From contig JAPYYK010000409.1 of NCBI GenBank assembly GCA_028534125.1, positions 1 to 64,000 on the forward strand: a stretch of 64,000 nucleotides of DNA. Reading direction: 5' to 3'. The position numbers were made by a program, and so were the translations under genes. The notes under the pieces are model-generated. The model did not search any database and was not told the DNA's origin. It saw nothing but the letters and a program-made list of their open reading frames with translations. Origin of the DNA: Lama glama. Its lineage: Eukaryota. Each line of letters opens with the position of its first letter. The stretch's first letter is position 1. Shown here piece after piece: positions 10,301-64,000 of this stretch.

Positions 10301-12167
10301 TGCCCTGGGAGGGGGAGGGTGGAGTCTCCAGGGCCTGGCCCTTTGTGTAAGAAACCAGCCTAGGAGAGTAGTAGTGCCATTTTCCTCTCCATTAGGCCCT
10401 TGGGGCCTGGAGTGGTTCATCCTCATAGAGCCAGAGGCTGTGCACCCCTTGGCCTGTCCTCTTGGATGGATGCGTCTGTAGTGCTGGCACCAGCTCAGTA
10501 GCCACCCTCTCTAGTTAAAGCAGCTGTCCCAACACAGACTGGTGGTCAAGGCAGAGGGGGCCCTAGACCTGCCCAATACTGTCTGCCCCCTCCCCTGGAT
10601 CTGAGGGTCTGGGGCAGAGGTCGAGGGGCTGGATTAGGAGCTAGGCTTCCTGGCTCCACCTGTGTCCCGCCCACAGTGTCCTCCTCTCTGCACTCCACCA
10701 GGGATGCACTCAGCTTCTCGTGCAGAGGCCCAAGGGACTTGCTCCATTGCAAGGGCTGGCTGCTTGGGCTCCTCCCTGCCTGACAGCCCCTGCAACCCCC
10801 AACCCGTGGCACCCCCACTGCAGGGGGCCCCTCAGAGCTCCTGTGGGAGGTAGTCTCAGAGTCCTGGAAAGCACTAGGTCGAGACCTCGAAATCTGGGGT
10901 CCCTCAGGGGCTCACGGAGCCCTCAAAAGCCTTTGGGTTGGGGTGCTCAGAGCACTAGGGGGCACTAGGCCAGCCCAGGTGCCGGAACAGTGGTGCCCCA
11001 TGCTACTTTCCTGTGGATCAGTGGCTGCCTCTGCTGTGCCTGCTCCCTCTCTGCTTAGGAGGGGCTGGACCTGGGTGAAGCCCTTGGTCTGGGTCTTAAG
11101 GAGCCGGCCATTGTCCACTTCCTGATCCTCCTCTTCTCCCTCCCAGAGCTCATGCTTTTCTGTGGCTGAGAAGCAACCCTGCCTGGGATCTGTCAGCTCA
11201 TCCTGGTCTAGAAAGTGCTTCCAGAAGCGGGGCATGACTAGCATGCTTGGAGCTGCCCAGTTGTGAGAGGCCTGAATATGTTAGCCTTGGCTGACTTTGA
11301 GGCCCTTCTCTCCAGATGGCGGTTGAGGTTGCCGGGGTGGGGTGGGGGGTTGCGTGGCTGCAAGTGGAACATCAGAGTTGTGTGCATAAGGCAGGAAAGT
11401 TTAGGAGGGCTTGGGATGGGGCACGGGTGATTTGGTTTCTTTTTTATAGTGGGAGACACTTGCGCAGGGATGTGGGAAGTGATGAACAGAGAAACAGGGG
11501 CTAGTGTGATGCCCTAGTGTGATGATGGCAAGAGGGAACCAGGGCAAGGCTCACCCAGGGACGTAGTGCAGGACAGGCAAGGACACCTGGAGCTCAAGTG
11601 GGAATGGGACAAACTCTGTGACCAATGGGCAGTGCCCTGAATATGTCCATCTGTCCACTGAGGAACCTTCAGACCCACAGCCTTACCCCCAGGGCAGGGA
11701 GCCTTATGACAGTGCCCTATCCAGGGGATAGTGACACATTTAAGATGCCAGGAGGATGGCCAGGGCCCACTGTGATTTAAGTCCTGCTTATCTGGTTCTC
11801 CCACCCAGCACTTTATACCTCCTGTAGCCTGGCCTTCCCCTCAGGCAACACCTGTTCCTGGTGTGGCCTGGGACAAGTTCACTAGCAGCAGGCCCTGTCC
11901 TGAGGGGGAATACACCTCTTGCCCCGTACTGCCTGAACCCAGGGAAGCAGAGAGGAGGCAAAGGCAGATGGAGCCTCCCGGAGTCAGTAGTGGCTGGCTG
12001 GGTAGGTGGGGCAAAGGTGTTGGGAAGCAGGAGCCACGGGGGCCGGGCAGTCGGAGGGGGCTGGCCTGGAGATCCAGCAGCCTGTGTTCTGGGCCCACAC
12101 TTCCATCCACCCTGTCGGGCCCTTTGCCAGAAAGCTAGAGACACTCCCAAGAGAATGGAAGCAGAAT

Positions 12168-12173
12168 TTTATT
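12168..12173 (-). terminator. Polyadenylation signal AATAAA of left FLNA copy
   Basis: tttatt on + strand, about 280 nt beyond the stop codon; mirror of 63091-63096. Confidence 0.85.
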
Positions 12174-12452
12174 CCTCTTGGCTAGGGAAGAGAACTAGCG
12201 GGTGGTTGTGCACAGGACCCCCACCCCTCACCCCTCCCAGAACCAAAGAAGATAGGCAGGGCCACCAGAGGGCTCCCTCTGCTCGCCTCTCTCCTTTGCT
12301 GGAGTGGAGGCAGGTGAGTGCAGCACAGGGCAGGGTCGGCTGCAGTGACAGGGTAGCCAGGGCTCCAGGGCTGAGGTGGGGTTGCTGCTCGGGTGGCAGA
12401 GGGTGGGCGCAGGGGCACTTCTCATCCTGGGAGCTGCTGGCTGGCACAGAGC

Positions 12453-15400
12453 TCAGGGCACCAGGACACGGTAGGGGCTGCCTGGGATGTGCTCATCACC
12501 CCATTTGACCACCAGCGTGTACTCCCCCTTGTCCTTGAGCAGGTAGGAGACACTGTAGAGCCTGCTGCCCACATGCTTCACCAGGATCTCCTCACAGGGC
12601 GTCCGTGGCCCATGTACCCCCACCAGCAGCATGTTGTTGCCTAGGGGTAGGGGAAGGGGCCTCAGTTCCAGGCTCCAAGTCCCCTCCCTTCAGCTGTGAC
12701 TGCACTGATCTCTCCTCCTGTTCTGGAGTCTCCCCTTCCCACCTCACCCATTTTCAGGTGACAGCCCTTTCTGCCGAGCTGCCAGCACCCCCACCCCAAA
12801 CCAATAGGGGAAACTCCAGCTCCTCGAAGGCACTTTCCTGAAGGGTAGAGGAGATGGCAGGGAAGCCCAGGTGGGAAGTTGCTCTAGAAGTGACAGCCAT
12901 GCCCCAAAAGGCATTTGTCCCACCCCCACTTCACCCCTTCCCATGTTCCCAGGCACTGGCCAAGGGCTGGGTCCTGGGTGCCCACCTGCTTTGCTGCAGT
13001 CCACCGTGAAGCTGCTCTTCTGGCCCATGTAGGCCTTGCTTAGCCCCAGACCCTTGGCCAACACCTTGCTGGCATCGGAGGGGCCTGGGCCTGGGGCCCC
13101 ATGCTGGGGGACACCGGCAGTCTTGGACAGGGAGTCTACAAACACTGATGATGTCTCATGGAGGCTGTGGTTGCTGACGAGACGGGGACCTGTAGGGCAG
13201 AGCAGGTGGGTCAGAGGTGGCCAGAGTGCCAGGCATTGAGTTGGGTGGGTGGCAGCAGTCTGGTGCATGGCTCACNNNNNNNNNNNNNNNNNNNNNNNNN
13301 NNNNNNNNNNNNNNNNNNNNNNNNNNNNNNNNNNNNNNNNNNNNNNNNNNNNNNNNNNNNNNNNNNNNNNNNNNNNNNNNNNNNNNNNNNNNNNNNNNNN
13401 NNNNNNNNNNNNNNNNNNNNNNNNNNNNNNNTGGTGACTGATAGGGCACCTGCTCCTGCATTGCTTGTGTTCACAATAAACTCAGCTGGGCTCCCTGGGG
13501 GCACAGGAGGTTAGGCAGAGCTGGTCCAGCCTGTTCCCCACCCCCACCCCCGGCCCAGCGTAGCCTGGTCACCTCCACACGCCTCCTGTTGTCACTGAGA
13601 GCTGGGAGGAGGGGCCCTAACAGCCACGTTCACACACCAGAAGCTGCACCCACTGACCTACCTGTGATGCCGCCTTCCAGGCCAGCTCCATAGGCGGACA
13701 CCAGGCCTGGGTCCCCTCCATGCCCGGGCTCCCCAACTCGAATCTTGAAGGGGCTTCCAGGGATGTGGGTGCCGTTGAACTTGACATCAATCAGGTAGAT
13801 GCCATTTTCCCGTGGGATAAAGCGCACGGCATACTTATCTGAGGAACAGAGGAGCATGCTGTGGGCCCAGGGTCCCTCCTCCAACCGAGCACGTGGCATC
13901 TGAGGAGCTTCCCTTGTCCACCAGAGTGAGTCCAGTAGCTTTAGGTGGCCCACTCAGCTTTTTCTGGGGACCATGCTAGACACCCACACTCCACAGCACA
14001 GGCTTCCTGAAGCCTCAAGGGTGAAGCTGAGCCAGATTCCCAAGGGCTTAGGTAACGAGGGGAAAGGGCTGCCTGGCTGAAGAAGCCAGGCACCTGTGCC
14101 CTGTCCGGGCTGCTTCCAGAGTCTGTGTCTGCCTTTTGTACTCTCAGCCTGCTTCCAGCCAGCGGGACGGGCCCAGGGGCGGCCCACTGCTCCCAGCGGG
14201 GCCAGGGCNNNNNNNNNNNNNNNNNNNNNNNNNNNNNNNNNNNNNNNNNNNNNNNNNNNNNNNNNNNNNNNNNNNNNNNNNNNNNNNNNNNNNNNNNNNN
14301 NNNNNNNNNNNNNNNNNNNNNNNNNNNNNNNNNNNNNNNNNNNNNNNNNNNNNNNNNNNNNNNNNNNNNNNNNNNNNNNNNNNNNNNNNNNNNNNNNNNN
14401 NNNNGGCTGAGGCTGGAGCAAGGGAAGACAGGGTCCCAGAAGCAGAAGGCCCACAGGGTTGCACTTACCCATCTGGCGTCCAACTTGGTTTAAAGAGGGA
14501 GAGCCACCTATTCTCAAGGGGCAGCAAGCTACAGGCGCACACACCCCCACTCCCAAACCCACGCTCCACATTCACACACAGGGGCAGCAGGAAGCAGGGT
14601 GGCCCCGCCCTGCGGGCAGCATGCAGCCCTAGCAGGCTGTCCCTCTTTAAACCTCAGCCCTGGTGCTCAAGGGGCACAGGCTTCTGTTCAAAGCCTTTAG
14701 ACCTGAGACACGAGAAAAACTCCACGTGGCGGTCAGGGGTACTTCCTGCCGACCCCAAGCGTGGGCTGCACCCGGCCAGAGCAGAAGCCCGGCGCCCCGA
14801 GCTGGGCTGGGCGGGTCACTTGACACAGGGCCAAGGCCTGCTCTGTGCGGCGGCTCTGGTCTGGCCGGGCCCAGGAGCCCCAGACGGGCGGTTTCTCTCG
14901 GTGTCTCACCTGAAGACTAGAAACAGTAAGACGGCGGGCGTCACCAGACGGAGAAGCCACAGGCACCACAAAGGGGCTGTCTGGGATGTGCTCCTCGTTG
15001 AACTTGACTGAGACCTCGTAGTCACCTGGGCAGGGAGAGAGAACAGAGGGCATGCTGGGAGGCCCCCACTTGTCAGCATTCAAACCTGCTGTCTCTCCCA
15101 AACAGCCTAAGTGGCCCTGGGACCTCACAGTAAAGGGTGGGAGCTGGGCAGGGATGTCTGCATAGACCCAGACCAATACCCACACCCAGGAACTGCCTCC
15201 CCAGGCCCAGCCAGGGCTTCAGTACCTGGCTCCTGGACCACATAGGCCACACCACAGGAGCCATCCTTGCGGTCCTCAAAGGAGATCTCGGCCTTGCTGG
15301 GGCCCTCAACAGCAATGGCCAGGCCCCCAGCGCCTGCTTCCCTGGTCCAAATGCTGAATTCAGCTGTGGGAAAGTAGTGTGTCCTCATGGAGGGCTGCTG

Positions 15401-18400
15401 TCCTGGCCTCAGCCCTCTCTGAGCATGGCTGAGACCAGCATGGCTGCTGGCTACTTCCTCCCCACCCCCCGACCCTCCCCCAGAAGACCAAGAGCCCCTC
15501 AGGAAGTAGGCCTACCTGGCACTCCAGCTTCAGCCCTCTCCAGGCCAGGGCCCCCGGCACGGACCTTGTGGGCTCCTCCTTCTCCCAGGGGTCCCACGGT
15601 GAACTGGAAAGGGCTCCCAGGCACGTGCTGGCCCTTGTACTTGACGCTGACTGTGTGCATGCCCATCTCAGCAGGCACAAAGCGGATGCAGTAGGTATGG
15701 TTCTCGCCTTCCACAATCTCAGCTTCATGGCTCTTGCCTGATGGGCTGGTCACCTGGGCTGTCATGTCCTGGATGCTAATTTCTGTAGGTGAGGGGTAGC
15801 CTGGTGAGCAGGAGACCCAGGCCCCAGCCCTCTGCTTGGGGCCACCTAGGGCTGGCACCCAGGACTCCCCAGGACCCCTCCCTGGCCCTGCTATAGCTCC
15901 TACCAGGGATCTTCAAGCTGAGGTCACAATGACTGCCAACATTAGCCACCGAAGGAGCCCGTCGCCTGCGTGTGATGCTCTCTTTCACCCGGCCCTCGCC
16001 TGTCACCTTCACGGAGAAGGGGCTGCCTGTAGGAAGAAAACACAGCCCACATCCCACACAGGTTACATTCTGCAGGCAAAGCCCAGAGTATGGCAAGGAG
16101 GGTCGCCCAGCCATGGGGGAGGGTGCGTGGGCACTGCCCTCACCAGGCACGTGCTGGTCGGCAAACTTGATGTTGATAATGTAGTTTCCAGGCTCTGTGG
16201 GGCAGTAGGTAACCCTGCATGTGCCATCTTCCAGGTCCTCTGTGTTGATATCTACCTTGCTGGGACCCTCGATGGACAGGCTAAGTCCACCATAGCCTGC
16301 AGGAGGGATACGCCTGAGTTAGGAGGCCAAAGAGAGTGGTCCCACCCGATTCCAGGCCACCACCGCCCACCTGCATCACGGGTGTCGATGATAAACTCTG
16401 CAGGCTCAAAGGTGTGGCCTTCATGAAGGCCCTGGCCTGAGACCCGCACACGGCTGGCATCCCCAATCTCCGACTGGCTGATCACCACTGGAATGGGGCT
16501 GCTCGCCACATGCTGACCATTCTTCTTCACGTGCACCAGGTGCTCTCCTGTCTCCTTGGGCACGAACGAGATCCCTGGGCACAACATAGGGTGGGGCCAT
16601 CAGCCAGGGAAAGGTTTGCCCACCCCCTGCCAGCCTCCTTCCTTTCCAGAAGGTGCGGCTCCCCAGCCTCTTACCCACGTGGCCATTGCGCAGCCGCTTC
16701 AGCAGACAGGGTTCCTCCCGGCCCGAGGGCGGCACCACCGTGGCTGTCAGCAGGCTGAGGTCCGTCTCCGAGATATTGATGGGGATGTCAGCGGCAGAGC
16801 CCACCTTAAGGTGGGACATGCGCATCGAGTCATCACCTGGCGGGGGACAGTCACTGTGTGTCCAGGCACAGAGGGAGACTGCGCCTACCCTGCCACCTGC
16901 CTCGTTCTGTCATTGCTCCAGGTACCACCTACCTGTGACCCTGGCAGTGAAGGGGCTTCCTGGGATGTGCTGCTCATTGTACTTGACCAGGATGCTGTAG
17001 TCACCAGGCAGCACAGGCAGGTAGGAGACGCTGCACGTCCCGTCCTGGTTGTCAGTACAGCTGATTTCTGCTTTGGATGGGCCCTCAATGGCCAGGGACA
17101 AGCCCCCTGGAGAGAGTTGTGGGTGAGGGTGGGAACTGTGACCAGAGACACTGCACCAATGAGAAGCCCCAACAGGCAAGGAGAGGCCCAGGTGGCAGGG
17201 TGGGGAATGCCCTTTGGGGAGTGTCTCCAGCATACAGTTCTCTATTAGATGATGGCATCTCACAACACACAGGCAGGTTAAGACTAGAGCCAACGCTCAC
17301 CCTCTCCTGCATCCTTGGTGTTGACCGTGAAAACAGCAGGCTTGTTCACCACCCCATGGGTAAGGCCAGGCCCGTAGGCTGTGACGTGGCCACAGTTGAC
17401 ATAATCCACGTAGAACTGTAGGGGGCTTCCTAAGGCAGGAAGGGGGCTATGTGGAATGGGGGCCTTGGGTTGTCCCCAAGTCCTTCCCCCAGCCCCAGGC
17501 CCCTGTGAGGTGGTGACGGCTGGCTGCGTGACGCACCTGGGATGTGCATGTTATCGTAGCGGATATCCATCTCATGCAGGCCAGCCTCGCTGGGCGCGTA
17601 GCGCACGGTCACAGTGCCATCTTTGTTGTCGGTGATAGCCGGCTGCGCCACTTTGCCCGAAGGCATCCGTACCTCCCCTGCAGGGCAGTGGGGTTGGGGT
17701 CAGGGCAGCCCGTCGGCACACCCTGGCCTCCCTAGAGCTCCTTCCCGCCCTGCTCACCGGTGATCTCGCCCTTCTTGATGGTGAAGGGGATGACAAGGTC
17801 GAAGGGCCTCAGGCTGGTCACATCCAGCCCATTGACACCCACCAAGGGTCTTTCTGGAGCCTGCAGTGGACACAAAGGGCCTGGGTCGGGAGCTGTTGAA
17901 GGGAGGGGAGTCCCAAGTGGGAGGATATGGGGTCCCTCCACAAAGGCAGCAGAACAGGGCCACACGGGACACCCAGCTGGCCAGTCCCCAAGTGTCCCCT
18001 AGGGCTAGGTAAGCTAGGAAGAGGTGGGCCAGGCCATACCCAGGTCTGTTGGCCACCCTGGGCATAGGTGTATGGTGGGGCCAGCTGCTGAGGCCGCAGT
18101 GGGGTCTGTGCCATGGGCTGATCTCCGGCCAGAGCCTGCAGAGCAACGTACAAGAGCTAGAGACCCTGGTCACACATGAGCCCCAGGGCAGGGGGCAGGC
18201 CAGGCCCTGCCCAGACCCCTCACCCCTGGCCCCTCCTGACCGTCACTTGGAAGGGGCTGTTTGGCACGTGTTCGCCGCCAAAGCGCACACAGATGACATA
18301 TTTGCCAGGCTGGGGAGCCGTATAGAAGATGTCGAAGGTGCCGTCCTCATTCTCTACCACATCCACGTCCACCTCAGAGCCGTCAGGTGTGCACACGGTG

Positions 18401-24400: not shown

Positions 24401-27400
24401 CGAGAAAGGGTGAGGGTAAGTCTAGAGAAGATGAGGTGGCCCCCCAAAACCCAATTACCTTGCTAGGTTTGGTGGGGGGCACAGCTTCCAGAGGAAAGGG
24501 GCTGCCGGGCACAGGGACACCGTCGTAGGTCACCTCTACCTCATAGGGCCCCTCCTCACGGGGCACAAAACGCACCACACTGTTGTCAGCCCCCAGGCCT
24601 GGCTCCACCTTGCAGGGTACTGCTGCCCCAGAGGGGCCCACGATCTTGGAGGCCACTTTGCCTTGGCCACCAGCACCCTTCGTCTTAACTGTGAACTCCT
24701 GGTCTTTGCCAACATCCACCTCTGTTGAGATGATGAAAAGAGGGAGAGAACCGTGCCGCCCTACCCAGGCAGCCCCAGGGCATGTTCTCAGTGACTGTGA
24801 CCAGGAACACAACTACTTACTCTCTCCCAGGCCGGACACCTTGATCTTGCTCAGGTCCAGGCTTGGAGACACCGCCACTGAGAAGGGGCTCTTGGGGATA
24901 GGGTCCCCTCCATAAGTGAGATTGATGCCCACTGGGCCCTGGGAGGGGTACAGAAGGCAGAGTCATGGGTCATGATTTTGGTCTCCCTGGCCCATGGCTT
25001 CCGAAATTGGGCATGGGGAGGGGACATCAGAGAAACACTGGCTTTGCTCTCCCACTGCCCCCCAGACTCCCATGCCCACTCCCTCCCAGGTAGGAAACAA
25101 GAGTGTGTGGGAAGGCCCCTAGAGCTGCCCACCAAGCCCACCAAGCGAGGAGGCCCAAAGGCTCAGCAGGTGTGGTGGAAGGTGCAGCGACAGGGGGCCG
25201 GGTGGCTACCTGCTGCACGGGAGTGTACTTGACAGTGTAGGTATTGTCATGATGGTCAATGATGTCCACATCACGCACCGCGTCCCCCTTGGCCAGCCCG
25301 GAGAACTGGACATCCAGCTTGCCTTTGCCAGCAGCTTTGGCATTGACCGTGAAGTGGGTAGGTTTGCCAAGCTCAACACCTGAGGAGACACAGTGAGAGA
25401 CCCTGTAGGGGTACCTTGGGTCTTGCCCCGCGACCTCCCCACACGGTACTCGTCCTCACCAGTGCGACTGAGACCAGGGCCCTCGGCCTTCACCTTGCTG
25501 GCATCATGGGAGGGCTCCACCTTGACACGGATGGGGCTGGTGGGCGTGGCCTGCAGTGGGTGGAAGGGGAAAGACTGAGAGGGGAGCAGCACCCCAACAC
25601 CCAGCAGAGTGAGGGACCGGGAGCAGCAGCACCCACCTGGTCAGCAAAGAGGACCATGATGGTGTAGCTGCCAGCCCCACGGGGTGTATACTTGACTGTG
25701 AAAGTGTCATTGTCATTGCGGATGATGTCAAAGTCAATATCGGCCTCGGTGGGGCCCACTACGCCAGGGGCGCACTTGATGCCAATGCTGACGTCGCCTG
25801 TAGTGGGGGAGGGGGTGGAGGCTGGGACTCACAGAGATGCCTTGCCCACTCGCCTACCCACTCTTGAGGCGGGGCCTTACCCTGGCCGGCCTCCGTGCAG
25901 TCCACAGTGAAGTAGGTGGGCTCGTGAGCCTTGAGCCCCGTCTTGGCCACTCCTGGACCGTACACCTTGACCTTGTTTGGGTGGCTGCCTGCTCCCACGT
26001 TCACCTGCAGGGCGTGGGGCAAGCGCAGGGGCATGACCAGCCTGCAGGAGCCACTGGGGCTTTTTCACCCACCATCAGGAGGCAAGCAAAATGGTGCAAC
26101 CACCTCAGGAAGTCATCTGGTGGTTCCTCAAACGATTACACATAAAGTGAGTACATACTGCTGCAATTCCACTCAGATGTGAAATCTGTCCACCCAGAAA
26201 AACAAGATCACTCATCCACACAAACACTTGTACTTGAACGTTCACAGCGGCACTGTTCACAACAGCCAAAAGGTGAGAAAATCCCAAATGTCCATCAACA
26301 AATGACCAGATAAGTAAAACATGGTCTCTCCATACAACGGAGTGCTAGTCAGCCATAAAAAGGCAGAAGCACAAAAGGGGATGCTGAGTGAAAGCAGCCA
26401 GGAACAGAAGGCCACCTCCTATAGGAAAGCAGATGAGGGGTTGCTGAGGGCTGGGCGGGGGTGAGGGGTGAGGTGCTAGCGGGTGGAGGAGTTTCTCTTA
26501 GGAATGGCGAAAACGTCTTCCTCTTTGATGTGGTGATGGCTGCGCAACTCTGAACTTACTCAAAACTACCGAGGTGTACATTCAAGAGGGGTCAGCTGTA
26601 GGCTATTCAAGTTTTATCGAACAGAGCTGGATGAGAACAAAGCAGGCACCCTAGGGAAGCAGGCTCCAGGCCAGTTCGAGGCCCACAGAGGGCAGGCTCA
26701 CCCGGAAGGGGCTGTTGGGGATGCTGACGCCGCCCCAAGACACCATGGCCGTGTGCTTCACAGGCTTCCGGGGCACATAAGAGCAGCTGTAAGTGCCATT
26801 GCCGTGGTCCTTGACTGATGCCTCCACAGGGCAGCCCTCATTGTCCTGGAAGGCAGGCGTAGTAGGTGGCCTCCTAGTCAGTACCCAGGCCTGGGCACCT
26901 GCCCACCCCACCCCCATGAGTGGGCACCTGACCTGCACTTGGACCCTGAGAGGAGCCTTCCCACCGTGCTTGGCATCCACCGTGAACTCCGCCGGCTTGT
27001 TGACAGCCACACCTGTCTTCTCCAATCCGGGCCCACGTGCCTTCACCTAATGGGAGGCCACCCAGATCTCAGGAGACCAAGTGCAGGCCCCCGTAGACAG
27101 AGTGGCAGGAGCACACCACCGGGGATACCAGCCCAGGCTTCCTGCCCCCAGCCCAGCCCCTACGCAGAGGTAGAAGGAGGTCAGAGACCTGGGCCAGCGG
27201 CACATGCCCTTTACCCTGTCTGGATGGAAATCCTGGGGGGCTTCGCGGATGTCTGCCATGAAGGGGCTCAGGCGGATATCTTCACTGTTGCACAGCACGT
27301 GCACAGCATACTCGCCAGCCTCCTGGGGCCAGTAGCGCACGTCACAGGAGCCATCGCCCTTGTCATCACATTCGATCTTGGCCTGTGATGGGCCCTCCAC

Positions 27401-53200: not shown

Positions 53201-56200
53201 GCCAAAATTCTTTCTGACCACTTTTAACATCCCGGCCCAACAGCCCCTTCAAGGTCAAGGTGCTGCCTACGCATGATGCCAGCAAGGTAAAGGCCAGTGG
53301 CCCTGGGCTCAACACCACTGGTGTGCCTGCCAGCCTGCCTGTGGAGTTCACCATTGATGCGAAGGATGCAGGGGAGGGTCTGCTGGCTGTCCAGATCACG
53401 GTGAGCTGACCACATGGGTGGCCACCTGGCCTTGCTGTTTTGCAGCTCCGGCCACATGGAAGGCGAGGAAGGGGAAGGGCCCAGGCTGGAGTGGTGGGTG
53501 GTGTGGGGCATGCAGCCTGGGGCAGATGGCCCAGTCCGGCTCTCTCTGATCTCCCTTGGGAGCTTTGTACAGGGGCAGGTCCCCTGCCTCTGGGATGGTA
53601 ATGACAGACAGGGGCTTCCCCACGCACGCACTTGCTCACTTCTAACTGAGCTCGTTATGGTACTGAAGCCCTTCTAGTGCCTCAACTTGCCCACCTGGAA
53701 CATTCTCTCGGGCCAGGTATGAGGCTAGGCTGGTGAGACCTTCTGGGGGAGTTCCTCCTAATGCTTGGCAGACCCTGGGGTGGAAGGTGGGAGCTGAGAG
53801 GTGCTCATGGGGATAAAGGAGAATGGGTGCCAAGTTTTCTGGCCTTGCCTGTTGTCACATGGGGGAGCACTGGGCATTTGAGGGCTTTTCTTCTGGGCCC
53901 TGCCCATGGGGGAGTAAGGGACAGTGTAGGATGCAGGCAGCCGTTTTGGGCCAAGGTGGTTGAGTGGCTCGCAGGTGTCCTTGCAGTAGCAGTGCTTGAC
54001 CCTTGATGCTTTGAGAGGGCCTGAGGTAATCCCGGGCCTGACTGAGCTTGGGCCAACTGCCTCCCCTGGGCTCTGCCACACAGGACCCCGAGGGCAAGCC
54101 CAAGAAGACGCACATCCAAGACAACCATGACGGCACGTACACGGTGGCCTACGTGCCAGACGTGACGGGCCGCTACACCATCCTCATCAAGTATGGTGGC
54201 GATGAGATCCCCTTCTCCCCATACCGCGTCCGGGCTGTGCCCACTGGGGATGCCAGCAAGTGCACCGTCACAGGTGAGCCTGCCCGCCAGCGGCCACGGC
54301 ACTCAGNNNNNNNNNNNNNNNNNNNNNNNNNNNNNNNNNNNNNNNNNNNNNNNNNNNNNNNNNNNNNNNNNNNNNNNNNNNNNNNNNNNNNNNNNNNNNN
54401 NNNNNNNNNNNNNNNNNNNNNNNNNNNNNNNNNNNNNNNNNNNNNNNNNNNNNNNNNNNNNNNNNNNNNNNNNNNNNNNNNNNNNNNNNNNNNNNNNNNN
54501 NNNNNNNNNNTCCTCTTCCGTGCTGATTCCCAGGACAGTTCCAGCTGCAGCTCTTGGCAGGGACAGAGGGGGGAACTGGAGGGTTAGGGCCCAGGGAGGC
54601 CTCCGGAGCTGAGCATGAGCACTCCAGCCCTCCCCTTCTCTGGGCCTCCGTTTCCCCATCTGAGAAGTCGGGTTGCAGCTGAGAGCTTTGGGGTGTGGTG
54701 CATCCTGAGAGGCACCCCACTGGGGGCTCTGGGGTCTGGGGATCTGGGCACCCCCGGGAAGTCCCAGGGGTGGGCAGCAAACCCTTTCTTTTCACTTCCT
54801 CCTTCTGTGTTAAGGGCTCTCACATGGGGTCTCCCTCAAGCCACGGGAGTCCCCGGCCCTGGCCAGATCCACAGACCCCCACCCCTACCTCCCAGAGGCC
54901 TCTGCGTCCCGGGCCGGGGGAGGCGCAGACTGCATGAGTGGGCGGGGCTGGCTAGTAGTGCGGCAGCACCGGCGTCGACTGCTTGGGCGGCCAGCATGGC
55001 GGGGCCCGGCCCAGCCTCAGAGCCCCAAAGTGCACTCGGTGGCCCACCCACCCTCTCCACATCCTTCCCTCCCCCTACTCCCTCAGCAGTGACGTTATTC
55101 AGATGGTCCCCAACTAGGCATGGAGATCCTCCTGCTCAGGCATGGGAGGGGAGAGCCAGCCCAGGCCAAGGGCACCTATGAGAGGCAGTAACTACATGGG
55201 AGCCTCGGAAGGCTGCAGGCCTGGAGCTTGGGCGAGGCGGCCAGGGATAAAGTTAGAGGGTGGCTGGGGTTTCGTGGCAGGGGTTGAGGGACTCTAGAGT
55301 GGGCCTCGGATTTGAGATGACAGGCATGTGTGCCTAGGGCAGCGGGACAGGGCCTTGGGGACCATGGGCAGGGTCAAGACTTAGCTGACAGAGTGGTCTC
55401 AGTTTACCTGGCCACTGTGTGCAGAATGGAGGCAGAGAGCCCAGCTGGGGAGCTGAAGTCACTTTTGGACCAGTTGGAGGGGTAGCTTGGTCTAGGCCAG
55501 TGATGGGGGACTTGAGAGGGGAACCAAATTGGGGGGTGTACTTTGAGGATAGAGCAGCTGAGACATGCTGATGGGCTGGGCGCTGGGCAGGGGAAGTGGG
55601 GAGTCCAGGCTAACTGTGAGGCCAGAAGCCTGAGCCACTAGCTAGACCGTGGGTCCACGTTCCAAGCAGGGAGAAAAGGTGTGGCTGCATGTGAGGTGAG
55701 GCCTCCCCGGGCAGGGTGGGCAGTAATGGGCCAGGTCTAGAGCTCAGGAGAGCTGTGGAAGGCCAGCATGGAGCTCAGCAGAGTGAGAGCCCTTGGCAGA
55801 GATGAGAGCTCAGCGGCAGGCTGGCTGGGGGTTGGGGGGTCCTTGAACTTAGCCCCTGAGTTGGTTTCGGTGCTCCCAGCTGCTTCCCTAGCAGAGGCTG
55901 GGCTACAGAAAGCACTTTCGCTGCCAGGCCTCACAGCCCACAGCCCCCCAAGCCTCCACGGCTGAGCCAAGATCATAACGTCACTGTCCCCCACTTTCCT
56001 CGGGCACTCTGGGGCCCTGGAGGCTGCTCAGCTGCTCCGCTCTTGCAACCTAGCAGCCGTGGCTCTGGCTTGGGCGTCCTGTCCCCTTCCCCCTGGGTGC
56101 TGCCGCTGCCACTGCCTGCTGCGCTGTGCTGCCTGGGTGCTAACCCTGCTGCCTACCTGCTTCCCTGCTCCCAGATCCTGCCTGCAACGGGCCATGCCCA

Positions 56201-59200
56201 GCCGTCCCTTTCTGCAAGCCTCCAAGCGAGAGTTCTCAGTTGTCAGGAAACTCCAATTTCACCTTCAGGCCGGGGTGGGGCGGGAGGCGAGTGTCACATT
56301 CCCCCACGCTGCAGCAGGACTCCGCCTCACTGCGTCTGCACACAGCACTGGGGGCCAGGCCGCAGGGGCGAAGGCAGCTGTGGGCCAGCTGGAGCACTGG
56401 CATTGGTCAGTGTGGTCCATGGCGCCAGCTGAGGCCAAGTTGGCAGGGGAGGTGGCGGCCAATGCTGGTGCCCTGACAGCATGTGGCCCTCCAGGCCCTT
56501 CCTTCCTCTCAAGACACCTGAGTTCCATCCGTCAGGCCTTCCCCACATAGGGGATTTCCCCAAGATAGCACTGCCTGGCTTGAGGTGGCTCAGGGGAACC
56601 TTTCCTGCCTTCTGAGAAATTACTCACCATCCCAGCTTGGGGGGGGTGGGGGCAGGAGGCCTGGCTATGCTTGGTGGCAGTAAGAGGCCTGGGCGGGTGG
56701 CAAGTGGACAGGAGCAGCCCGAGCACCAAGCTCATGCACTGGCCCCCACTTTGGGGACCCACCCTGCCCCACCAGGTGCTGGCATCGGCCCCACCATCCA
56801 GATTGGAGAGGAGACAGTGATCACCGTGGACACCAAGGCGGCGGGCAAAGGCAAGGTGACCTGCACCGTGTGCACACCTGACGGCTCTGAGGTGGACGTG
56901 GATGTGGTAGAGAATGAGGACGGCACCTTCGACATCTTCTATACGGCTCCCCAGCCTGGCAAATATGTCATCTGTGTGCGCTTTGGCGGCGAACACGTGC
57001 CAAACAGCCCCTTCCAAGTGACGGTCAGGAGGGGCCAGGGGTGAGGGGTCTGGGCAGGGCCTGGCCTGCCCCCTGCCCTGGGGCTCATGTGTGACCAGGG
57101 TCTCTAGCTCTTGTACGTTGCTCTGCAGGCTCTGGCCGGAGATCAGCCCATGGCACAGACCCCACTGCGGCCTCAGCAGCTGGCCCCACCATACACCTAT
57201 GCCCAGGGTGGCCAACAGACCTGGGTATGGCCTGGCCCACCTCTTCCTAGCTTACCTAGCCCTAGGGGACACTTGGGGACTGGCCAGCTGGGTGTCCCGT
57301 GTGGCCCTGTTCTGCTGCCTTTGTGGAGGGACCCCATATCCTCCCACTTGGGACTCCCCTCCCTTCAACAGCTCCCGACCCAGGCCCTTTGTGTCCACTG
57401 CAGGCTCCAGAAAGACCCTTGGTGGGTGTCAATGGGCTGGATGTGACCAGCCTGAGGCCCTTCGACCTTGTCATCCCCTTCACCATCAAGAAGGGCGAGA
57501 TCACCGGTGAGCAGGGCGGGAAGGAGCTCTAGGGAGGCCAGGGTGTGCCGACGGGCTGCCCTGACCCCAACCCCACTGCCCTGCAGGGGAGGTACGGATG
57601 CCTTCGGGCAAAGTGGCGCAGCCGGCTATCACCGACAACAAAGATGGCACTGTGACCGTGCGCTACGCGCCCAGCGAGGCTGGCCTGCATGAGATGGATA
57701 TCCGCTACGATAACATGCACATCCCAGGTGCGTCACGCAGCCAGCCGTCACCACCTCACAGGGGCCTGGGGCTGGGGGAAGGACTTGGGGACAACCCAAG
57801 GCCCCCATTCCACATAGCCCCCTTCCTGCCTTAGGAAGCCCCCTACAGTTCTACGTGGATTATGTCAACTGTGGCCACGTCACAGCCTACGGGCCTGGCC
57901 TTACCCATGGGGTGGTGAACAAGCCTGCTGTTTTCACGGTCAACACCAAGGATGCAGGAGAGGGTGAGCGTTGGCTCTAGTCTTAACCTGCCTGTGTGTT
58001 GTGAGATGCCATCATCTAATAGAGAACTGTATGCTGGAGACACTCCCCAAAGGGCATTCCCCACCCTGCCACCTGGGCCTCTCCTTGCCTGTTGGGGCTT
58101 CTCATTGGTGCAGTGTCTCTGGTCACAGTTCCCACCCTCACCCACAACTCTCTCCAGGGGGCTTGTCCCTGGCCATTGAGGGCCCATCCAAAGCAGAAAT
58201 CAGCTGTACTGACAACCAGGACGGGACGTGCAGCGTCTCCTACCTGCCTGTGCTGCCTGGTGACTACAGCATCCTGGTCAAGTACAATGAGCAGCACATC
58301 CCAGGAAGCCCCTTCACTGCCAGGGTCACAGGTAGGTGGTACCTGGAGCAATGACAGAACGAGGCAGGTGGCAGGGTAGGCGCAGTCTCCCTCTGTGCCT
58401 GGACACACAGTGACTGTCCCCCGCCAGGTGATGACTCGATGCGCATGTCCCACCTTAAGGTGGGCTCTGCCGCTGACATCCCCATCAATATCTCGGAGAC
58501 GGACCTCAGCCTGCTGACAGCCACGGTGGTGCCGCCCTCGGGCCGGGAGGAACCCTGTCTGCTGAAGCGGCTGCGCAATGGCCACGTGGGTAAGAGGCTG
58601 GGGAGCCGCACCTTCTGGAAAGGAAGGAGGCTGGCAGGGGGTGGGCAAACCTTTCCCTGGCTGATGGCCCCACCCTATGTTGTGCCCAGGGATCTCGTTC
58701 GTGCCCAAGGAGACAGGAGAGCACCTGGTGCACGTGAAGAAGAATGGTCAGCATGTGGCGAGCAGCCCCATTCCAGTGGTGATCAGCCAGTCGGAGATTG
58801 GGGATGCCAGCCGTGTGCGGGTCTCAGGCCAGGGCCTTCATGAAGGCCACACCTTTGAGCCTGCAGAGTTTATCATCGACACCCGTGATGCAGGTGGGCG
58901 GTGGTGGCCTGGAATCGGGTGGGACCACTCTCTTTGGCCTCCTAACTCAGGCGTATCCCTCCTGCAGGCTATGGTGGACTTAGCCTGTCCATCGAGGGTC
59001 CCAGCAAGGTAGATATCAACACAGAGGACCTGGAAGATGGCACATGCAGGGTTACCTACTGCCCCACAGAGCCTGGAAACTACATTATCAACATCAAGTT
59101 TGCCGACCAGCACGTGCCTGGTGAGGGCAGTGCCCACGCACCCTCCCCCATGGCTGGGCGACCCTCCTTGCCATACTCTGGGCTTTGCCTGCAGAATGTA

Positions 59201-62200
59201 ACCTGTGTGGGATGTGGGCTGTGTTTTCTTCCTACAGGCAGCCCCTTCTCCGTGAAGGTGACAGGCGAGGGCCGGGTGAAAGAGAGCATCACACGCAGGC
59301 GACGGGCTCCTTCGGTGGCTAATGTTGGCAGTCATTGTGACCTCAGCTTGAAGATCCCTGGTAGGAGCTATAGCAGGGCCAGGGAGGGGTCCTGGGGAGT
59401 CCTGGGTGCCAGCCCTAGGTGGCCCCAAGCAGAGGGCTGGGGCCTGGGTCTCCTGCTCACCAGGCTACCCCTCACCTACAGAAATTAGCATCCAGGACAT
59501 GACAGCCCAGGTGACCAGCCCATCAGGCAAGAGCCATGAAGCTGAGATTGTGGAAGGCGAGAACCATACCTACTGCATCCGCTTTGTGCCTGCTGAGATG
59601 GGCATGCACACAGTCAGCGTCAAGTACAAGGGCCAGCACGTGCCTGGGAGCCCTTTCCAGTTCACCGTGGGACCCCTGGGAGAAGGAGGAGCCCACAAGG
59701 TCCGTGCCGGGGGCCCTGGCCTGGAGAGGGCTGAAGCTGGAGTGCCAGGTAGGCCTACTTCCTGAGGGGCTCTTGGTCTTCTGGGGGAGGGTCGGGGGGT
59801 GGGGAGGAAGTAGCCAGCAGCCATGCTGGTCTCAGCCATGCTCAGAGAGGGCTGAGGCCAGGACAGCAGCCCTCCATGAGGACACACTACTTTCCCACAG
59901 CTGAATTCAGCATTTGGACCAGGGAAGCAGGCGCTGGGGGCCTGGCCATTGCTGTTGAGGGCCCCAGCAAGGCCGAGATCTCCTTTGAGGACCGCAAGGA
60001 TGGCTCCTGTGGTGTGGCCTATGTGGTCCAGGAGCCAGGTACTGAAGCCCTGGCTGGGCCTGGGGAGGCAGTTCCTGGGTGTGGGTATTGGTCTGGGTCT
60101 ATGCAGACATCCCTGCCCAGCTCCCACCCTTTACTGTGAGGTCCCAGGGCCACTTAGGCTGTTTGGGAGAGACAGCAGGTTTGAATGCTGACAAGTGGGG
60201 GCCTCCCAGCATGCCCTCTGTTCTCTCTCCCTGCCCAGGTGACTACGAGGTCTCAGTCAAGTTCAACGAGGAGCACATCCCAGACAGCCCCTTTGTGGTG
60301 CCTGTGGCTTCTCCGTCTGGTGACGCCCGCCGTCTTACTGTTTCTAGTCTTCAGGTGAGACACCGAGAGAAACCGCCCGTCTGGGGCTCCTGGGCCCGGC
60401 CAGACCAGAGCCGCCGCACAGAGCAGGCCTTGGCCCTGTGTCAAGTGACCCGCCCAGCCCAGCTCGGGGCGCCGGGCTTCTGCTCTGGCCGGGTGCAGCC
60501 CACGCTTGGGGTCGGCAGGAAGTACCCCTGACCGCCACGTGGAGTTTTTCTCGTGTCTCAGGTCTAAAGGCTTTGAACAGAAGCCTGTGCCCCTTGAGCA
60601 CCAGGGCTGAGGTTTAAAGAGGGACAGCCTGCTAGGGCTGCATGCTGCCCGCAGGGCGGGGCCACCCTGCTTCCTGCTGCCCCTGTGTGTGAATGTGGAG
60701 CGTGGGTTTGGGAGTGGGGGTGTGTGCGCCTGTAGCTTGCTGCCCCTTGAGAATAGGTGGCTCTCCCTCTTTAAACCAAGTTGGACGCCAGATGGGTAAG
60801 TGCAACCCTGTGGGCCTTCTGCTTCTGGGACCCTGTCTTCCCTTGCTCCAGCCTCAGCCNNNNNNNNNNNNNNNNNNNNNNNNNNNNNNNNNNNNNNNNN
60901 NNNNNNNNNNNNNNNNNNNNNNNNNNNNNNNNNNNNNNNNNNNNNNNNNNNNNNNNNNNNNNNNNNNNNNNNNNNNNNNNNNNNNNNNNNNNNNNNNNNN
61001 NNNNNNNNNNNNNNNNNNNNNNNNNNNNNNNNNNNNNNNNNNNNNNNNNNNNNNNGCCCTGGCCCCGCTGGGAGCAGTGGGCCGCCCCTGGGCCCGTCCC
61101 GCTGGCTGGAAGCAGGCTGAGAGTACAAAAGGCAGACACAGACTCTGGAAGCAGCCCGGACAGGGCACAGGTGCCTGGCTTCTTCAGCCAGGCAGCCCTT
61201 TCCCCTCGTTACCTAAGCCCTTGGGAATCTGGCTCAGCTTCACCCTTGAGGCTTCAGGAAGCCTGTGCTGTGGAGTGTGGGTGTCTAGCATGGTCCCCAG
61301 AAAAAGCTGAGTGGGCCACCTAAAGCTACTGGACTCACTCTGGTGGACAAGGGAAGCTCCTCAGATGCCACGTGCTCGGTTGGAGGAGGGACCCTGGGCC
61401 CACAGCATGCTCCTCTGTTCCTCAGATAAGTATGCCGTGCGCTTTATCCCACGGGAAAATGGCATCTACCTGATTGATGTCAAGTTCAACGGCACCCACA
61501 TCCCTGGAAGCCCCTTCAAGATTCGAGTTGGGGAGCCCGGGCATGGAGGGGACCCAGGCCTGGTGTCCGCCTATGGAGCTGGCCTGGAAGGCGGCATCAC
61601 AGGTAGGTCAGTGGGTGCAGCTTCTGGTGTGTGAACGTGGCTGTTAGGGCCCCTCCTCCCAGCTCTCAGTGACAACAGGAGGCGTGTGGAGGTGACCAGG
61701 CTACGCTGGGCCGGGGGTGGGGGTGGGGAACAGGCTGGACCAGCTCTGCCTAACCTCCTGTGCCCCCAGGGAGCCCAGCTGAGTTTATTGTGAACACAAG
61801 CAATGCAGGAGCAGGTGCCCTATCAGTCACCANNNNNNNNNNNNNNNNNNNNNNNNNNNNNNNNNNNNNNNNNNNNNNNNNNNNNNNNNNNNNNNNNNNN
61901 NNNNNNNNNNNNNNNNNNNNNNNNNNNNNNNNNNNNNNNNNNNNNNNNNNNNNNNNNNNNNNNNNNNNNNNNNNNNNNNNNNNNNNNNGTGAGCCATGCA
62001 CCAGACTGCTGCCACCCACCCAACTCAATGCCTGGCACTCTGGCCACCTCTGACCCACCTGCTCTGCCCTACAGGTCCCCGTCTCGTCAGCAACCACAGC
62101 CTCCATGAGACATCATCAGTGTTTGTAGACTCCCTGTCCAAGACTGCCGGTGTCCCCCAGCATGGGGCCCCAGGCCCAGGCCCCTCCGATGCCAGCAAGG

Positions 62201-62811
62201 TGTTGGCCAAGGGTCTGGGGCTAAGCAAGGCCTACATGGGCCAGAAGAGCAGCTTCACGGTGGACTGCAGCAAAGCAGGTGGGCACCCAGGACCCAGCCC
62301 TTGGCCAGTGCCTGGGAACATGGGAAGGGGTGAAGTGGGGGTGGGACAAATGCCTTTTGGGGCATGGCTGTCACTTCTAGAGCAACTTCCCACCTGGGCT
62401 TCCCTGCCATCTCCTCTACCCTTCAGGAAAGTGCCTTCGAGGAGCTGGAGTTTCCCCTATTGGTTTGGGGTGGGGGTGCTGGCAGCTCGGCAGAAAGGGC
62501 TGTCACCTGAAAATGGGTGAGGTGGGAAGGGGAGACTCCAGAACAGGAGGAGAGATCAGTGCAGTCACAGCTGAAGGGAGGGGACTTGGAGCCTGGAACT
62601 GAGGCCCCTTCCCCTACCCCTAGGCAACAACATGCTGCTGGTGGGGGTACATGGGCCACGGACGCCCTGTGAGGAGATCCTGGTGAAGCATGTGGGCAGC
62701 AGGCTCTACAGTGTCTCCTACCTGCTCAAGGACAAGGGGGAGTACACGCTGGTGGTCAAATGGGGTGATGAGCACATCCCAGGCAGCCCCTACCGTGTCC
62801 TGGTGCCCTGA
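41207..62811 (+). CDS. FLNA: Filamin A, right (plus-strand) copy; multi-exon, exons 2-48
   Basis: Coding exons read from GT/AG junctions: 41207-41579, 44664-44912, 45001-45098, 45219-45366, 45778-45896, 45989-46066, 46157-46319, 46409-46609, 47156-47293, 47378-47501, 47618-47754, 47856-48049, 48218-48331, 48419-48562, 49260-49383, 49467-49627, 49714-49804, 49885-50054, 50326-50443, 50543-50805, 51022-51619, 51704-51877, 51959-52121, 52199-52359, 52455-52625, 53030-53153, 53244-53400, 54084-54273, [small alternative exon 30 presumably under N 54307-54510], 56776-57023, 57129-57224, 57404-57506, 57587-57727, 57835-57963, 58158-58331, 58428-58589, 58690-58893, 58968-59120, 59238-59360, 59482-59748, 59901-60038, 60239-60354, [exon 44 presumably under N 60860-61055], 61426-61602, 61770-61988, 62075-62278, 62624-62811. 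Phases are consistent. FLNA-specific N-terminus, RRRAPSV phosphosite and C-terminus [16 protein letters not shown]. Confidence 0.97.
42593..42809. promoter_or_regulatory. Intron 2 enhancer-like cluster: TEAD, AP-1, CArG (right copy)
   Basis: GGAATG 42593-42598, TGAGTCA 42656-42662, CCATATAAGG 42800-42809. Confidence 0.6.
46848..46904 (+). other. Candidate poison (NMD) exon in FLNA intron 9, right copy
   Basis: AG|...|GT-bounded 57-nt segment after a long CU-rich tract; joined to exon 9 it reads E-L-A-P-V-V-stop. Confidence 0.65.
48639..49179 (-). mobile_element. L1 (L1MB-type) 3' fragment in FLNA intron 15, right copy
   Basis: Mirror of 26085-26625. Confidence 0.8.
60334..60583 (+). other. 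A-to-I editing stem: exon 43 end (Gln CAG 60352-60354) and intronic complementary sequence, right copy
   Basis: 60334-60374 (cttactgtttctagtcttcaggtgagacaccgagagaaacc) is imperfectly complementary to 60544-60583 (gtttttctcgtgtctcaggtctaaaggctttgaacagaag); position fits the known FLNA Q/R recoding site. Confidence 0.75.
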
Positions 62812-63090
62812 GCTCTGTGCCAGCCAGCAGCTCCCAGGATGAGAAGTGCCCCTGCGCCCACCCTCTGCCACCCGAGCAGCAACCCCACCTCAGCCCTGGA
62901 GCCCTGGCTACCCTGTCACTGCAGCCGACCCTGCCCTGTGCTGCACTCACCTGCCTCCACTCCAGCAAAGGAGAGAGGCGAGCAGAGGGAGCCCTCTGGT
63001 GGCCCTGCCTATCTTCTTTGGTTCTGGGAGGGGTGAGGGGTGGGGGTCCTGTGCACAACCACCCGCTAGTTCTCTTCCCTAGCCAAGAGG

Positions 63091-63096
63091 AATAAA
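63091..63096 (+). terminator. Polyadenylation signal AATAAA of right FLNA copy
   Basis: aataaa 280 nt after TGA, followed by a GT/T-rich stretch. Confidence 0.85.
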
Positions 63097-64000
63097 ATTC
63101 TGCTTCCATTCTCTTGGGAGTGTCTCTAGCTTTCTGGCAAAGGGCCCGACAGGGTGGATGGAAGTGTGGGCCCAGAACACAGGCTGCTGGATCTCCAGGC
63201 CAGCCCCCTCCGACTGCCCGGCCCCCGTGGCTCCTGCTTCCCAACACCTTTGCCCCACCTACCCAGCCAGCCACTACTGACTCCGGGAGGCTCCATCTGC
63301 CTTTGCCTCCTCTCTGCTTCCCTGGGTTCAGGCAGTACGGGGCAAGAGGTGTATTCCCCCTCAGGACAGGGCCTGCTGCTAGTGAACTTGTCCCAGGCCA
63401 CACCAGGAACAGGTGTTGCCTGAGGGGAAGGCCAGGCTACAGGAGGTATAAAGTGCTGGGTGGGAGAACCAGATAAGCAGGACTTAAATCACAGTGGGCC
63501 CTGGCCATCCTCCTGGCATCTTAAATGTGTCACTATCCCCTGGATAGGGCACTGTCATAAGGCTCCCTGCCCTGGGGGTAAGGCTGTGGGTCTGAAGGTT
63601 CCTCAGTGGACAGATGGACATATTCAGGGCACTGCCCATTGGTCACAGAGTTTGTCCCATTCCCACTTGAGCTCCAGGTGTCCTTGCCTGTCCTGCACTA
63701 CGTCCCTGGGTGAGCCTTGCCCTGGTTCCCTCTTGCCATCATCACACTAGGGCATCACACTAGCCCCTGTTTCTCTGTTCATCACTTCCCACATCCCTGC
63801 GCAAGTGTCTCCCACTATAAAAAAGAAACCAAATCACCCGTGCCCCATCCCAAGCCCTCCTAAACTTTCCTGCCTTATGCACACAACTCTGATGTTCCAC
63901 TTGCAGCCACGCAACCCCCCACCCCACCCCGGCAACCTCAACCGCCATCTGGAGAGAAGGGCCTCAAAGTCAGCCAAGGCTAACATATTCAGGCCTCTCA

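What the first reader, a model, noticed from the sequence alone, without database searches (positions are those of the whole stretch)
11264..64000. Two identical, head-to-head FLNA genes form the arms of a >=24-kb palindrome
Seen: constant mirror offset (x <-> 75264-x) with no indels and identical six-frame translations over at least 24 kb, including introns, the intronic L1, the 3'UTR and downstream DNA. Both copies have intact exons 2-48 where unmasked. Known: FLNA is a single-copy X-linked gene in human and mouse, where inverted repeats flank the FLNA-EMD segment and drive a recurrent inversion, but FLNA itself lies between the repeats. Inference: in this probably camelid lineage the ancestral inverted repeat has grown inward to include all FLNA coding exons, giving a broadly expressed gene kept as two copies by arm-to-arm gene conversion. 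Described X palindromes mostly carry testis genes. I am not aware of this arrangement being described.
Basis: partly seen in the sequence, partly recalled or inferred. Interest (0 to 1): 0.95.

Follow-up and report, generated by a model that had tools for sequence, protein, structure and literature searches.

The report
Perfect FLNA palindrome, reality still untested
In this camel-type assembly the filamin A gene body occurs twice as perfectly identical mirror-image arms of at least 24 kb around a 4.7-kb centre holding its only promoter. The worn inner edge looks evolved, not like a random assembly join, but no reads could be laid to prove both copies exist in the animal.

Summary
Positions 11264-35266 and 39998-64000 are exact reverse complements: 24,003 bp each, 23,219 comparable bases, no mismatch, no indel. 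The arm runs off the window, so its outer end is unseen.

The N runs are letter-for-letter masks inside exons, not gaps. Each arm holds filamin A from the start codon to the stop, the polyA signal and at least 0.9 kb beyond.

"Two identical genes" overstates it. The 4,731-bp spacer is asymmetric and holds the only exon-1 CpG island, facing the right copy. The left copy starts in intron 1. No emerin was found in the spacer or the left flank.

New evidence concerns the inner edge. Homology continues about 50 bp past the perfect arms at about 88% identity. At both diagnostic sites a Logan ORF from a relative (P0001) carries the state of the novel junction J1. This excludes a random chimeric join.

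My odds are about 0.6 for a real palindrome and about 0.33 for arms over-extended or duplicated by the assembler at a real smaller inverted paralogue. If real, it is a new variant of the known FLNA-EMD palindrome (human P24).

The parts
11264..35266 (-). Left palindrome arm: filamin A copy on the - strand, from about 1.2 kb of intron 1 through exon 2 to the last exon, the 3'UTR and at least 0.9 kb downstream. It lacks exon 1 and the exon-1 promoter. It may extend left of 11264, because the mirror partner lies beyond the window.
   Evidence: 0 mismatches against 39998-64000; boundary at 35266/35267. Coordinates are the mirror of the right copy.
39998..64000 (+). Right palindrome arm: filamin A copy on the + strand, continuous with its own intron 1, exon 1 and promoter in the spacer.
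35267..39997 (.). Asymmetric spacer of 4,731 bp. It has no internal inverted symmetry beyond the edges.
   Evidence: the local alignment of its two halves scores no better than shuffled sequence.
35267..35315 (.). Worn edge at the novel junction J1. It is homologous to the reverse complement of 39936-39997, with substitutions at 35267, 35272 and 35298 and a 12-bp deletion flanked by TGG repeats.
39936..39997 (.). Worn edge at the native junction J2, in FLNA intron 1. It carries the 12 bp GCAGCCGTCATG that J1 lacks.
37750..38230 (+). CpG-island promoter and inferred non-coding exon 1 of FLNA, partly masked at 38011-38141. The donor CAG|GTGAGG lies at 38230/38231 and faces the right copy only.
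   Evidence: sequence; GC 0.70-0.74, CpG observed/expected 0.6-0.7. The exon assignment is inferred.
41207..62811 (+). Filamin A coding span of the right copy, from ATG to stop, introns included. The AATAAA signal is at 63091.
12453..34057 (-). Filamin A coding span of the left copy, the exact mirror of 41207-62811.
   Evidence: together.
40250..42000 (+). Second CpG island over the end of intron 1 and exon 2. It is present in both arms (mirror 33264-35014) and is the only candidate promoter of the left copy.
   Evidence: GC about 0.7, CpG observed/expected 0.63-0.90.
36545..36716 (-). tRNA-derived SINE in the spacer, flanked by a perfect 21-bp direct repeat (36545-36565 and 36696-36716) that is probably a target-site duplication.
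   Evidence: (Rfam tRNA hit at 36619-36690, - strand).

Best explanation
The locus is most likely a real large palindrome on the X chromosome of a Camelus-type animal and a rearranged counterpart of the eutherian FLNA-EMD palindrome (human P24). An inverted copy of the FLNA gene body, from intron 1 to beyond the polyA site, sits 2.7 kb upstream of the FLNA promoter. The two gene bodies form arms of at least 24 kb. The 4.7-kb spacer carries the only exon-1 promoter.

Inferred, not shown: arm-to-arm gene conversion, or a consensus collapsed by the assembler, keeps the arms identical. The last roughly 50 bp at the inner edge lie outside conversion tracts and have diverged. Recombination between the arms would flip the spacer so that the promoter faces either gene body, leaving an equivalent structure. 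At any time there would be one complete FLNA transcription unit plus one copy without exon 1. That second copy could serve as a conversion template and might be transcribed from its own exon-2 CpG island.
For: The inverted identity is perfect over 23,219 comparable bases, and no scaffold gap adjoins the junction, since the N runs are in-frame masks. The junction is not abrupt: homology continues about 50 bp at about 88% identity, with 3 substitutions and a 12-bp indel between direct TGG repeats, and then stops. No repeat family explains that edge within the window.

A Logan ORF from a relative (P0001, 94% identical over the 235-aa query, seen on 5 contigs) begins MVVCPLQSP. J1 reads (L)VVCPLQSP and J2 reads MVVYPFQSP. 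At both sites where the edges differ, the relative therefore has the J1 state. Either J1 is a true paralogue that kept ancestral states while J2 changed, or the relative itself has J1. Neither fits a random chimeric join.

Inverted repeats flank FLNA-EMD in 16 mammals and their content is not orthologous in all of them. Palindrome centres are the unstable part (PMC8327919). In human patients the FLNA-flanking inverted repeats generate extra inverted FLNA copies by template switching (PMC11293582).
Against: No read or independent contig was seen crossing 35266/35267, and no depth ratio was obtained. Zero differences in 23 kb is also what a graph node traversed twice, or a false duplication, would give. 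Emerin, the conserved head-to-head neighbour of FLNA, is absent from the spacer and the left flank, so a real structure needs EMD moved or lost. In the relative, the contig carrying P0001 runs through the boundary as one complete ORF, so that species shows no second continuation at this point. The palindrome is therefore not shown to be shared. No paper reporting it in camelids was found.
Confidence: 0.6

Rival explanations
1. The arms are largely an assembly product. The genome really holds only a short, old, diverged inverted paralogue of FLNA intron 1 upstream of the promoter, or a much shorter palindrome. The assembler switched from it into the reverse complement of the true FLNA path, or walked one graph node twice. 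This gave a false second gene body and displaced the EMD-side sequence.
For: Identity is exactly 100% over 23,219 bases, as expected if both arms come from one consensus. EMD is missing where it is conserved. No independent confirmation of the junction or of copy number was obtained. The relative's contig passes the boundary unbranched. Other unchecked notes on this genome report many small perfect inverted or tandem duplicates and a probably inverted contig, which hints at an error-prone assembly.
Against: The window has no real gap in 64 kb, so the contigs come from long reads. Long-read assemblers are not misled by a roughly 50-bp, 88%-identical paralogue. To mislead them the true arms would need to be near read length, and that would already be a large real palindrome containing FLNA exons. 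No gap or contig end adjoins the duplicate.
Confidence: 0.33
2. A random chimeric or fold-back artefact. A hairpin or missed-adapter read, a ligation chimera or an amplification chimera joined FLNA to its own reverse complement.
For: Perfect inverted identity is the hallmark of fold-back reads.
Against: Fold-back reads give no 4.7-kb asymmetric spacer. A random join would not be followed by about 50 bp of diverged homology to the partner edge, and it would not carry the relative's states at both diagnostic sites.
Confidence: 0.03
3. A retained haplotig: the second X haplotype of a female was placed next to the first in inverted orientation.
For: False duplications of this kind occur in diploid assemblies (general knowledge).
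Against: There are no heterozygous differences in 23 kb. There is no gap at the join. Homology stops about 50 bp past the boundary instead of continuing through intron 1 and the promoter.
Confidence: 0.02

Closest known systems
Human X palindrome P24, the 11.3-kb inverted repeats flanking FLNA-EMD (Small et al. 1997 and Caceres et al. 2007, as cited in PMC8327919; Jackson et al. 2021, PMC8327919)
   Same: It involves the same gene neighbourhood (FLNA). Both have large, near-identical inverted arms around a spacer, homogenisation by gene conversion, and a spacer expected to invert by recombination between the arms. The content of the repeats is known to differ between mammals.
   Different: In human, FLNA and EMD both lie in a spacer of about 48 kb and the arms carry neither. 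Here the FLNA coding exons are in the arms, the spacer is 4.7 kb and holds only FLNA exon 1 and its promoter, and EMD is not seen.
Primate and mouse X and Y palindromes carrying testis-expressed gene families (PMC8327919, PMC8981503, bioRxiv 10.1101/800185)
   Same: [quoted passage not shown]
   Different: The arm gene here is a broadly expressed, dosage-sensitive disease gene rather than a testis gene family. Only one of the two copies has the canonical promoter.
DUP-TRP/INV-DUP rearrangements at Xq28 and fold-back or template-switch inverted duplications (Grochowski et al. 2024, PMC11293582)
   Same: Inverted extra copies of FLNA arise by template switching at inverted repeats. One junction lies in homology and the other at microhomology. 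The short diverged inverted homology at J1/J2 could have been such a switch point.
   Different: Those are rare pathogenic human variants with triplicated segments. Here the structure appears as the reference state of an assembly. No triplication or second junction is visible in the window.
False duplications in genome assemblies (mentioned in the title/abstract-level hits; properties from general knowledge)
   Same: Two 100%-identical copies lie next to each other, and a conserved neighbour gene has been displaced.
   Different: There is no adjoining gap or contig end. The join shows an evolved, diverged edge.

Membership tests
Large sex-chromosome palindrome (criteria of Jackson et al. 2021: inverted arms of at least 8 kb, at least 99% identity, spacer) | Inverted arms of at least 8 kb around a spacer | tested here: met
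   The arms are at least 24,003 bp and the spacer is 4,731 bp, in the assembly.
Large sex-chromosome palindrome (criteria of Jackson et al. 2021: inverted arms of at least 8 kb, at least 99% identity, spacer) | Arm-to-arm identity of at least 99% | tested here: met
   100% over 23,219 comparable bases.
Large sex-chromosome palindrome (criteria of Jackson et al. 2021: inverted arms of at least 8 kb, at least 99% identity, spacer) | Both arms exist as separate copies in the organism, shown by reads spanning each junction and 2:1 depth | not testable with these tools
All runs found are kept only as contigs.
Large sex-chromosome palindrome (criteria of Jackson et al. 2021: inverted arms of at least 8 kb, at least 99% identity, spacer) | Ongoing arm-to-arm gene conversion | tested here: inconclusive
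   There are no differences in the arms against about 9% divergence plus an indel in the adjoining 35-50 bp. This fits conversion, but it also fits a young or collapsed duplicate. No population or cross-species arm data were available.
Large sex-chromosome palindrome (criteria of Jackson et al. 2021: inverted arms of at least 8 kb, at least 99% identity, spacer) | Location on a sex chromosome | not tested
   Inferred only from the conserved X linkage of FLNA in eutherians.
Orthologue of human palindrome P24 | FLNA and EMD lie in the spacer | tested here: not met
   The FLNA coding exons are in the arms.
Orthologue of human palindrome P24 | Arms orthologous to the FLNA-flanking repeats of other mammals | not testable with these tools
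Assembly false duplication | The duplicate adjoins a gap or contig end | tested here: not met
   No N lies at 35266/35267. The N runs are in-frame exon masks. Real gaps in this genome are reported as 500 N (note s1-857091, unchecked).
Assembly false duplication | An abrupt join with no homology beyond it | tested here: not met
   About 50 bp of diverged homology follow the perfect arm, and they carry the relative's states at both diagnostic sites.
Assembly false duplication | Read depth of the duplicated part equals single-copy depth | not testable with these tools
   As above.
Filamin A gene | Filamin/ABP280 Ig repeats along the gene, the FLNA-type N terminus and C-terminal repeat 24, with best matches to FLNA rather than FLNB or FLNC | tested here: met
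   Pfam PF00630 hits in 6 of 8 pieces. The top PDB hits are Filamin-A (2j3s, 3rgh; E 5e-58 and 4e-57), ahead of Filamin-B and -C. The start [10 protein letters not shown] and the end [10 protein letters not shown] were found. The CH-domain exons are partly masked and were not scored.

The most novel reading that the evidence does not exclude
In Camelus the eutherian FLNA-EMD palindrome has been remodelled so that a broadly expressed, dosage-sensitive disease gene lies in the arms as two perfectly homogenised gene bodies. They share one promoter and exon 1 on a 4.7-kb spacer that can invert. Spacer inversion would swap which body is transcribed, the silent body would serve as a conversion template, and emerin would have been moved away from its conserved head-to-head position or lost.
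Probability: 0.5. Interest if true: 0.7.

Novelty: new variant of a known kind. Interest (0 to 1): 0.5.

Why it matters
Known X and Y palindromes mostly carry testis gene families. FLNA and EMD are the textbook case of housekeeping genes sitting in a palindrome spacer.

A lineage in which the FLNA gene body itself has become palindrome arm would show three things. Palindrome boundaries can swallow an essential somatic gene. A single promoter in a spacer that can invert can serve two gene bodies. The conserved FLNA-EMD head-to-head pair can be broken. It would also give a natural test of whether arm-to-arm conversion protects a large, dosage-sensitive gene.

If it is an artefact, it marks a 24-kb false duplication and a misplaced EMD region in a chromosome-level camelid assembly. 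That error would corrupt FLNA annotation and copy-number calls.

Tried and rejected
1. Reads test. The look-up of sequencing runs on 34160-39990 found 18 runs from 7 studies and 4 coded organisms holding 0.86-0.99 of the words, all kept as Logan contigs. I did not send 34882-34924 or their mirror 40340-40382 to any later search tool. The Rfam and protein queries were cut beside them, and only local scripts read the whole window.

2. The diagnostic 78-aa ORF across J1 (35076-35309, + strand) found nothing in the protein collection.

3. The arm-end 37-mer (35230-35266) had no match in JGI metagenome contigs.

4. The listing of cluster members gave no accession or organism for P0001.

5. Caceres et al. 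2007 is not held under its DOI or its PMC id. I used it only as cited in PMC8327919.

6. Emerin motif search in the spacer and the left flank gave nothing.

7. Rfam found only two tRNA-derived SINEs.

8. Notes on neighbouring genes in this genome (TKTL1, RPL10 and others) do not exist, and places beyond the window cannot be queried.

9. I did not build a joined spliced FLNA model or look up full-length FLNA from other assemblies, because that would have exposed the masked letters. For this reason exon-by-exon intactness is not verified.

10. The paper on assembler palindrome artefacts (PMC9528984) concerns short exact palindromes in de Bruijn graphs and does not bear on this case.
Full report
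**Observation**

From 11264 to 35266 every comparable base is the complement of its partner in 39998-64000, with no mismatch and no indel. Each arm is 24,003 bp, of which 23,219 positions are not N. The first mismatch is at 35267/39997. Because 64000 is the window end, the arm length is a minimum. Whether 1-11263 is also arm cannot be seen. Nothing in 1-11263 has a copy inside the window apart from a SINE.

**The N runs**

I tested these first, as asked.
- The four runs in each arm mirror each other with identical lengths.
- In exon 2 a single open frame reads ..[21 protein letters not shown], then 77 hidden residues, then [26 protein letters not shown].
- The run 61833-61988 is exactly 52 codons. 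What follows it looks intronic, and by my recalled human FLNA sequence the exon should end there.
- They are therefore letter-for-letter masks of conserved exon parts, in frame, and not assembly gaps.
- An unchecked note on this genome (s1-857091) reports true scaffold gaps as 500 N. None occurs here, so the 64 kb is one contig.
- I did not try to fill the masks.

**Content of the arms**

- The right arm encodes filamin A on the + strand. The ATG is at 41207, Pfam Filamin repeats occur in 6 of 8 sampled pieces, and the best PDB matches are Filamin-A, ahead of Filamin-B and -C.
- The protein ends ..[23 protein letters not shown], with a stop at 62809-62811 and AATAAA at 63091. The arm goes on at least 0.9 kb further.
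- The left arm is the exact mirror: ATG at 34057 and stop at 12453-12455 on the - strand.

**The centre is not symmetric**

- The 4,731-bp spacer has no internal inverted similarity.
- It holds a CpG island at about 37750-38500, partly masked, followed by a good donor CAG|GTGAGG at 38230/38231 on the + strand. I take this to be the non-coding exon 1 of FLNA.
- It faces the right copy only. The right copy is therefore a complete gene: 2.7 kb of upstream DNA, promoter, exon 1, a 3-kb intron 1, then exon 2.
- The left copy starts inside intron 1, about 1.2 kb from its ATG. Its only candidate promoter is the second CpG island over exon 2, which both arms share.
- No emerin-like coding sequence was found in the spacer or in 1-11263 (a weak motif test). 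In human, EMD lies head to head with FLNA in the same spacer (PMC8327919).

**The inner edge**

This is the most informative part of the window.
- Past the perfect arm, J1 (35267 onward) and the reverse complement of J2 (39997 downward) stay alignable for about 35-50 bp. They show three substitutions (35267, 35272, 35298) and a 12-bp indel flanked by TGG repeats. After that all similarity ends.
- Nothing else in the window resembles this edge, so a dispersed repeat does not explain it within the window.
- A protein search with an arm ORF lying beside the filtered place (40384-41088) found one Logan protein, P0001. It has 370 aa, is 94% identical, and was seen on 5 contigs of up to 3.4 kb.
- The camel runs share 86-99% of 31-mers with the window, which means more than 99.5% identity. 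P0001 therefore comes from a more distant relative, probably a South American camelid. That attribution is an inference.
- P0001 begins MVVCPLQSP. The window reads (A A V) M V V Y P F Q S P at J2 and (Q A) L V V C P L Q S P at J1.
- At both sites where the two edges differ in that stretch, the relative has the J1 state.
- Either P0001 is the relative's native intron 1, starting at the ATG inside the 12 bp, in which case J1 has kept ancestral states while J2 changed and J1 lost 12 bp. Or the relative itself carries J1.
Only one sequence version exists in the collection, and its contigs run through the boundary as one complete ORF.
- Under either reading, J1 is a diverged paralogue of the intron-1 sequence. 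It is not a random chimeric join.

**What this does and does not settle**

It makes a hairpin, chimeric-read or haplotig artefact very unlikely. It shows that an inverted copy of FLNA intron-1 sequence really lies upstream of the promoter.

It does not show that this copy continues for 24 kb at 100% identity in the animal. An assembler that represents both arms by one graph node, or that wrongly leaves a short old paralogue for the true FLNA path, would print the same letters.

Against that rival: the contig is gap-free over 64 kb, so it comes from long reads. A 50-bp, 88%-identical paralogue cannot mislead such assemblers. Only true arms near read length could, and those would already be a large palindrome containing FLNA exons.

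For that rival: the identity is exactly 100%, EMD has vanished, there is no independent support, and several unchecked notes report small perfect duplicates elsewhere in this assembly.

**Tests that failed**

- The look-up of sequencing runs found 18 runs from 7 studies, all kept as contigs.
- From then on I worked beside those places and their mirror 40340-40382.
- A J1-spanning ORF and an arm-end 37-mer found nothing in the protein and metagenome collections.

**Mechanism**

All of this is inferred. The contrast between no differences in 23 kb and about 9% divergence plus an indel in the adjoining 35 bp is what arm-to-arm gene conversion produces when tracts cannot reach the last bases of homology. 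The same contrast would also arise if a young inverted duplication used an older short inverted paralogue as its template-switch point.

Inverted repeats flank FLNA-EMD in the 16 mammals examined, with content that is not orthologous in all of them. Palindrome centres are the unstable part (PMC8327919). In human Xq28 patients the FLNA-flanking repeats drive template switches that create extra inverted FLNA copies (PMC11293582). A replicative or BIR-type event that copied the FLNA body in inverted orientation and ended at the short homology at 35267-35315 would give this structure. It would delete or displace EMD.

With perfect 24-kb arms the spacer should invert often. Each inversion gives the mirror-equivalent state, so there is always one full FLNA unit and one body without exon 1.

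**Comparison and novelty**

The closest known object is human palindrome P24. This locus fails P24's defining arrangement, in which FLNA and EMD lie in the spacer, but it works like it. No paper describing FLNA in palindrome arms in camelids was found. If real, it is a new variant of a known kind.

**Verdict**

| Reading | Probability |
|---|---|
| Real palindrome with two FLNA gene bodies | about 0.6 |
| Arms produced or over-extended by the assembler at a real smaller inverted paralogue | about 0.33 |
| Random chimeric or fold-back artefact | 0.03 |
| Retained haplotig | 0.02 |

Interest is 0.5, and it would rise to about 0.7 if reads confirm J1 and a 2:1 depth.

Noticed in passing
window 3500-5444: A CpG island (GC 0.62-0.68, CpG observed/expected 0.67-0.84) lies next to a 162-bp masked, presumably conserved, element at 5283-5444. 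It is 7-8.6 kb beyond the 3' end of the left FLNA copy. No recognisable coding ORF is nearby, and the gene or element is unidentified.
   Followed up: partly
window 2429-2500 (+) and 36619-36690 (-): Two tRNA-derived SINE copies, scored as Rfam tRNA at 38.7 and 39.8 bits and about 81% alike. The one in the spacer is flanked by a perfect 21-bp direct repeat (36545-36565 / 36696-36716), probably a target-site duplication, which suggests a fairly young insertion into the spacer.
   Followed up: partly
window 39979-39990 versus 35281/35282: The 12-bp difference between the two worn edges (GCAGCCGTCATG, present at J2 and absent at J1) lies between direct TGG repeats, as expected for a slippage or microhomology deletion.
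   Followed up: yes
window 48920-49156 (mirror about 26108-26344): An open frame reads like the C-terminal part of L1 ORF2 (..[17 protein letters not shown]..). It is an L1 fragment inside an FLNA intron and is identical in both arms.
   Followed up: no
P0001 versus window 39982-41088: The relative's ORF follows the window's frame, then a second frame (SAPRDSEAHPDPG..GSHW), then the first frame again. The relative therefore differs from the camel sequence by at least two frame-shifting indels in intron 1, which confirms this long GC-rich ORF is non-coding.
   Followed up: partly
The message says the filter also trips by chance. I did not examine them further.
   Followed up: no
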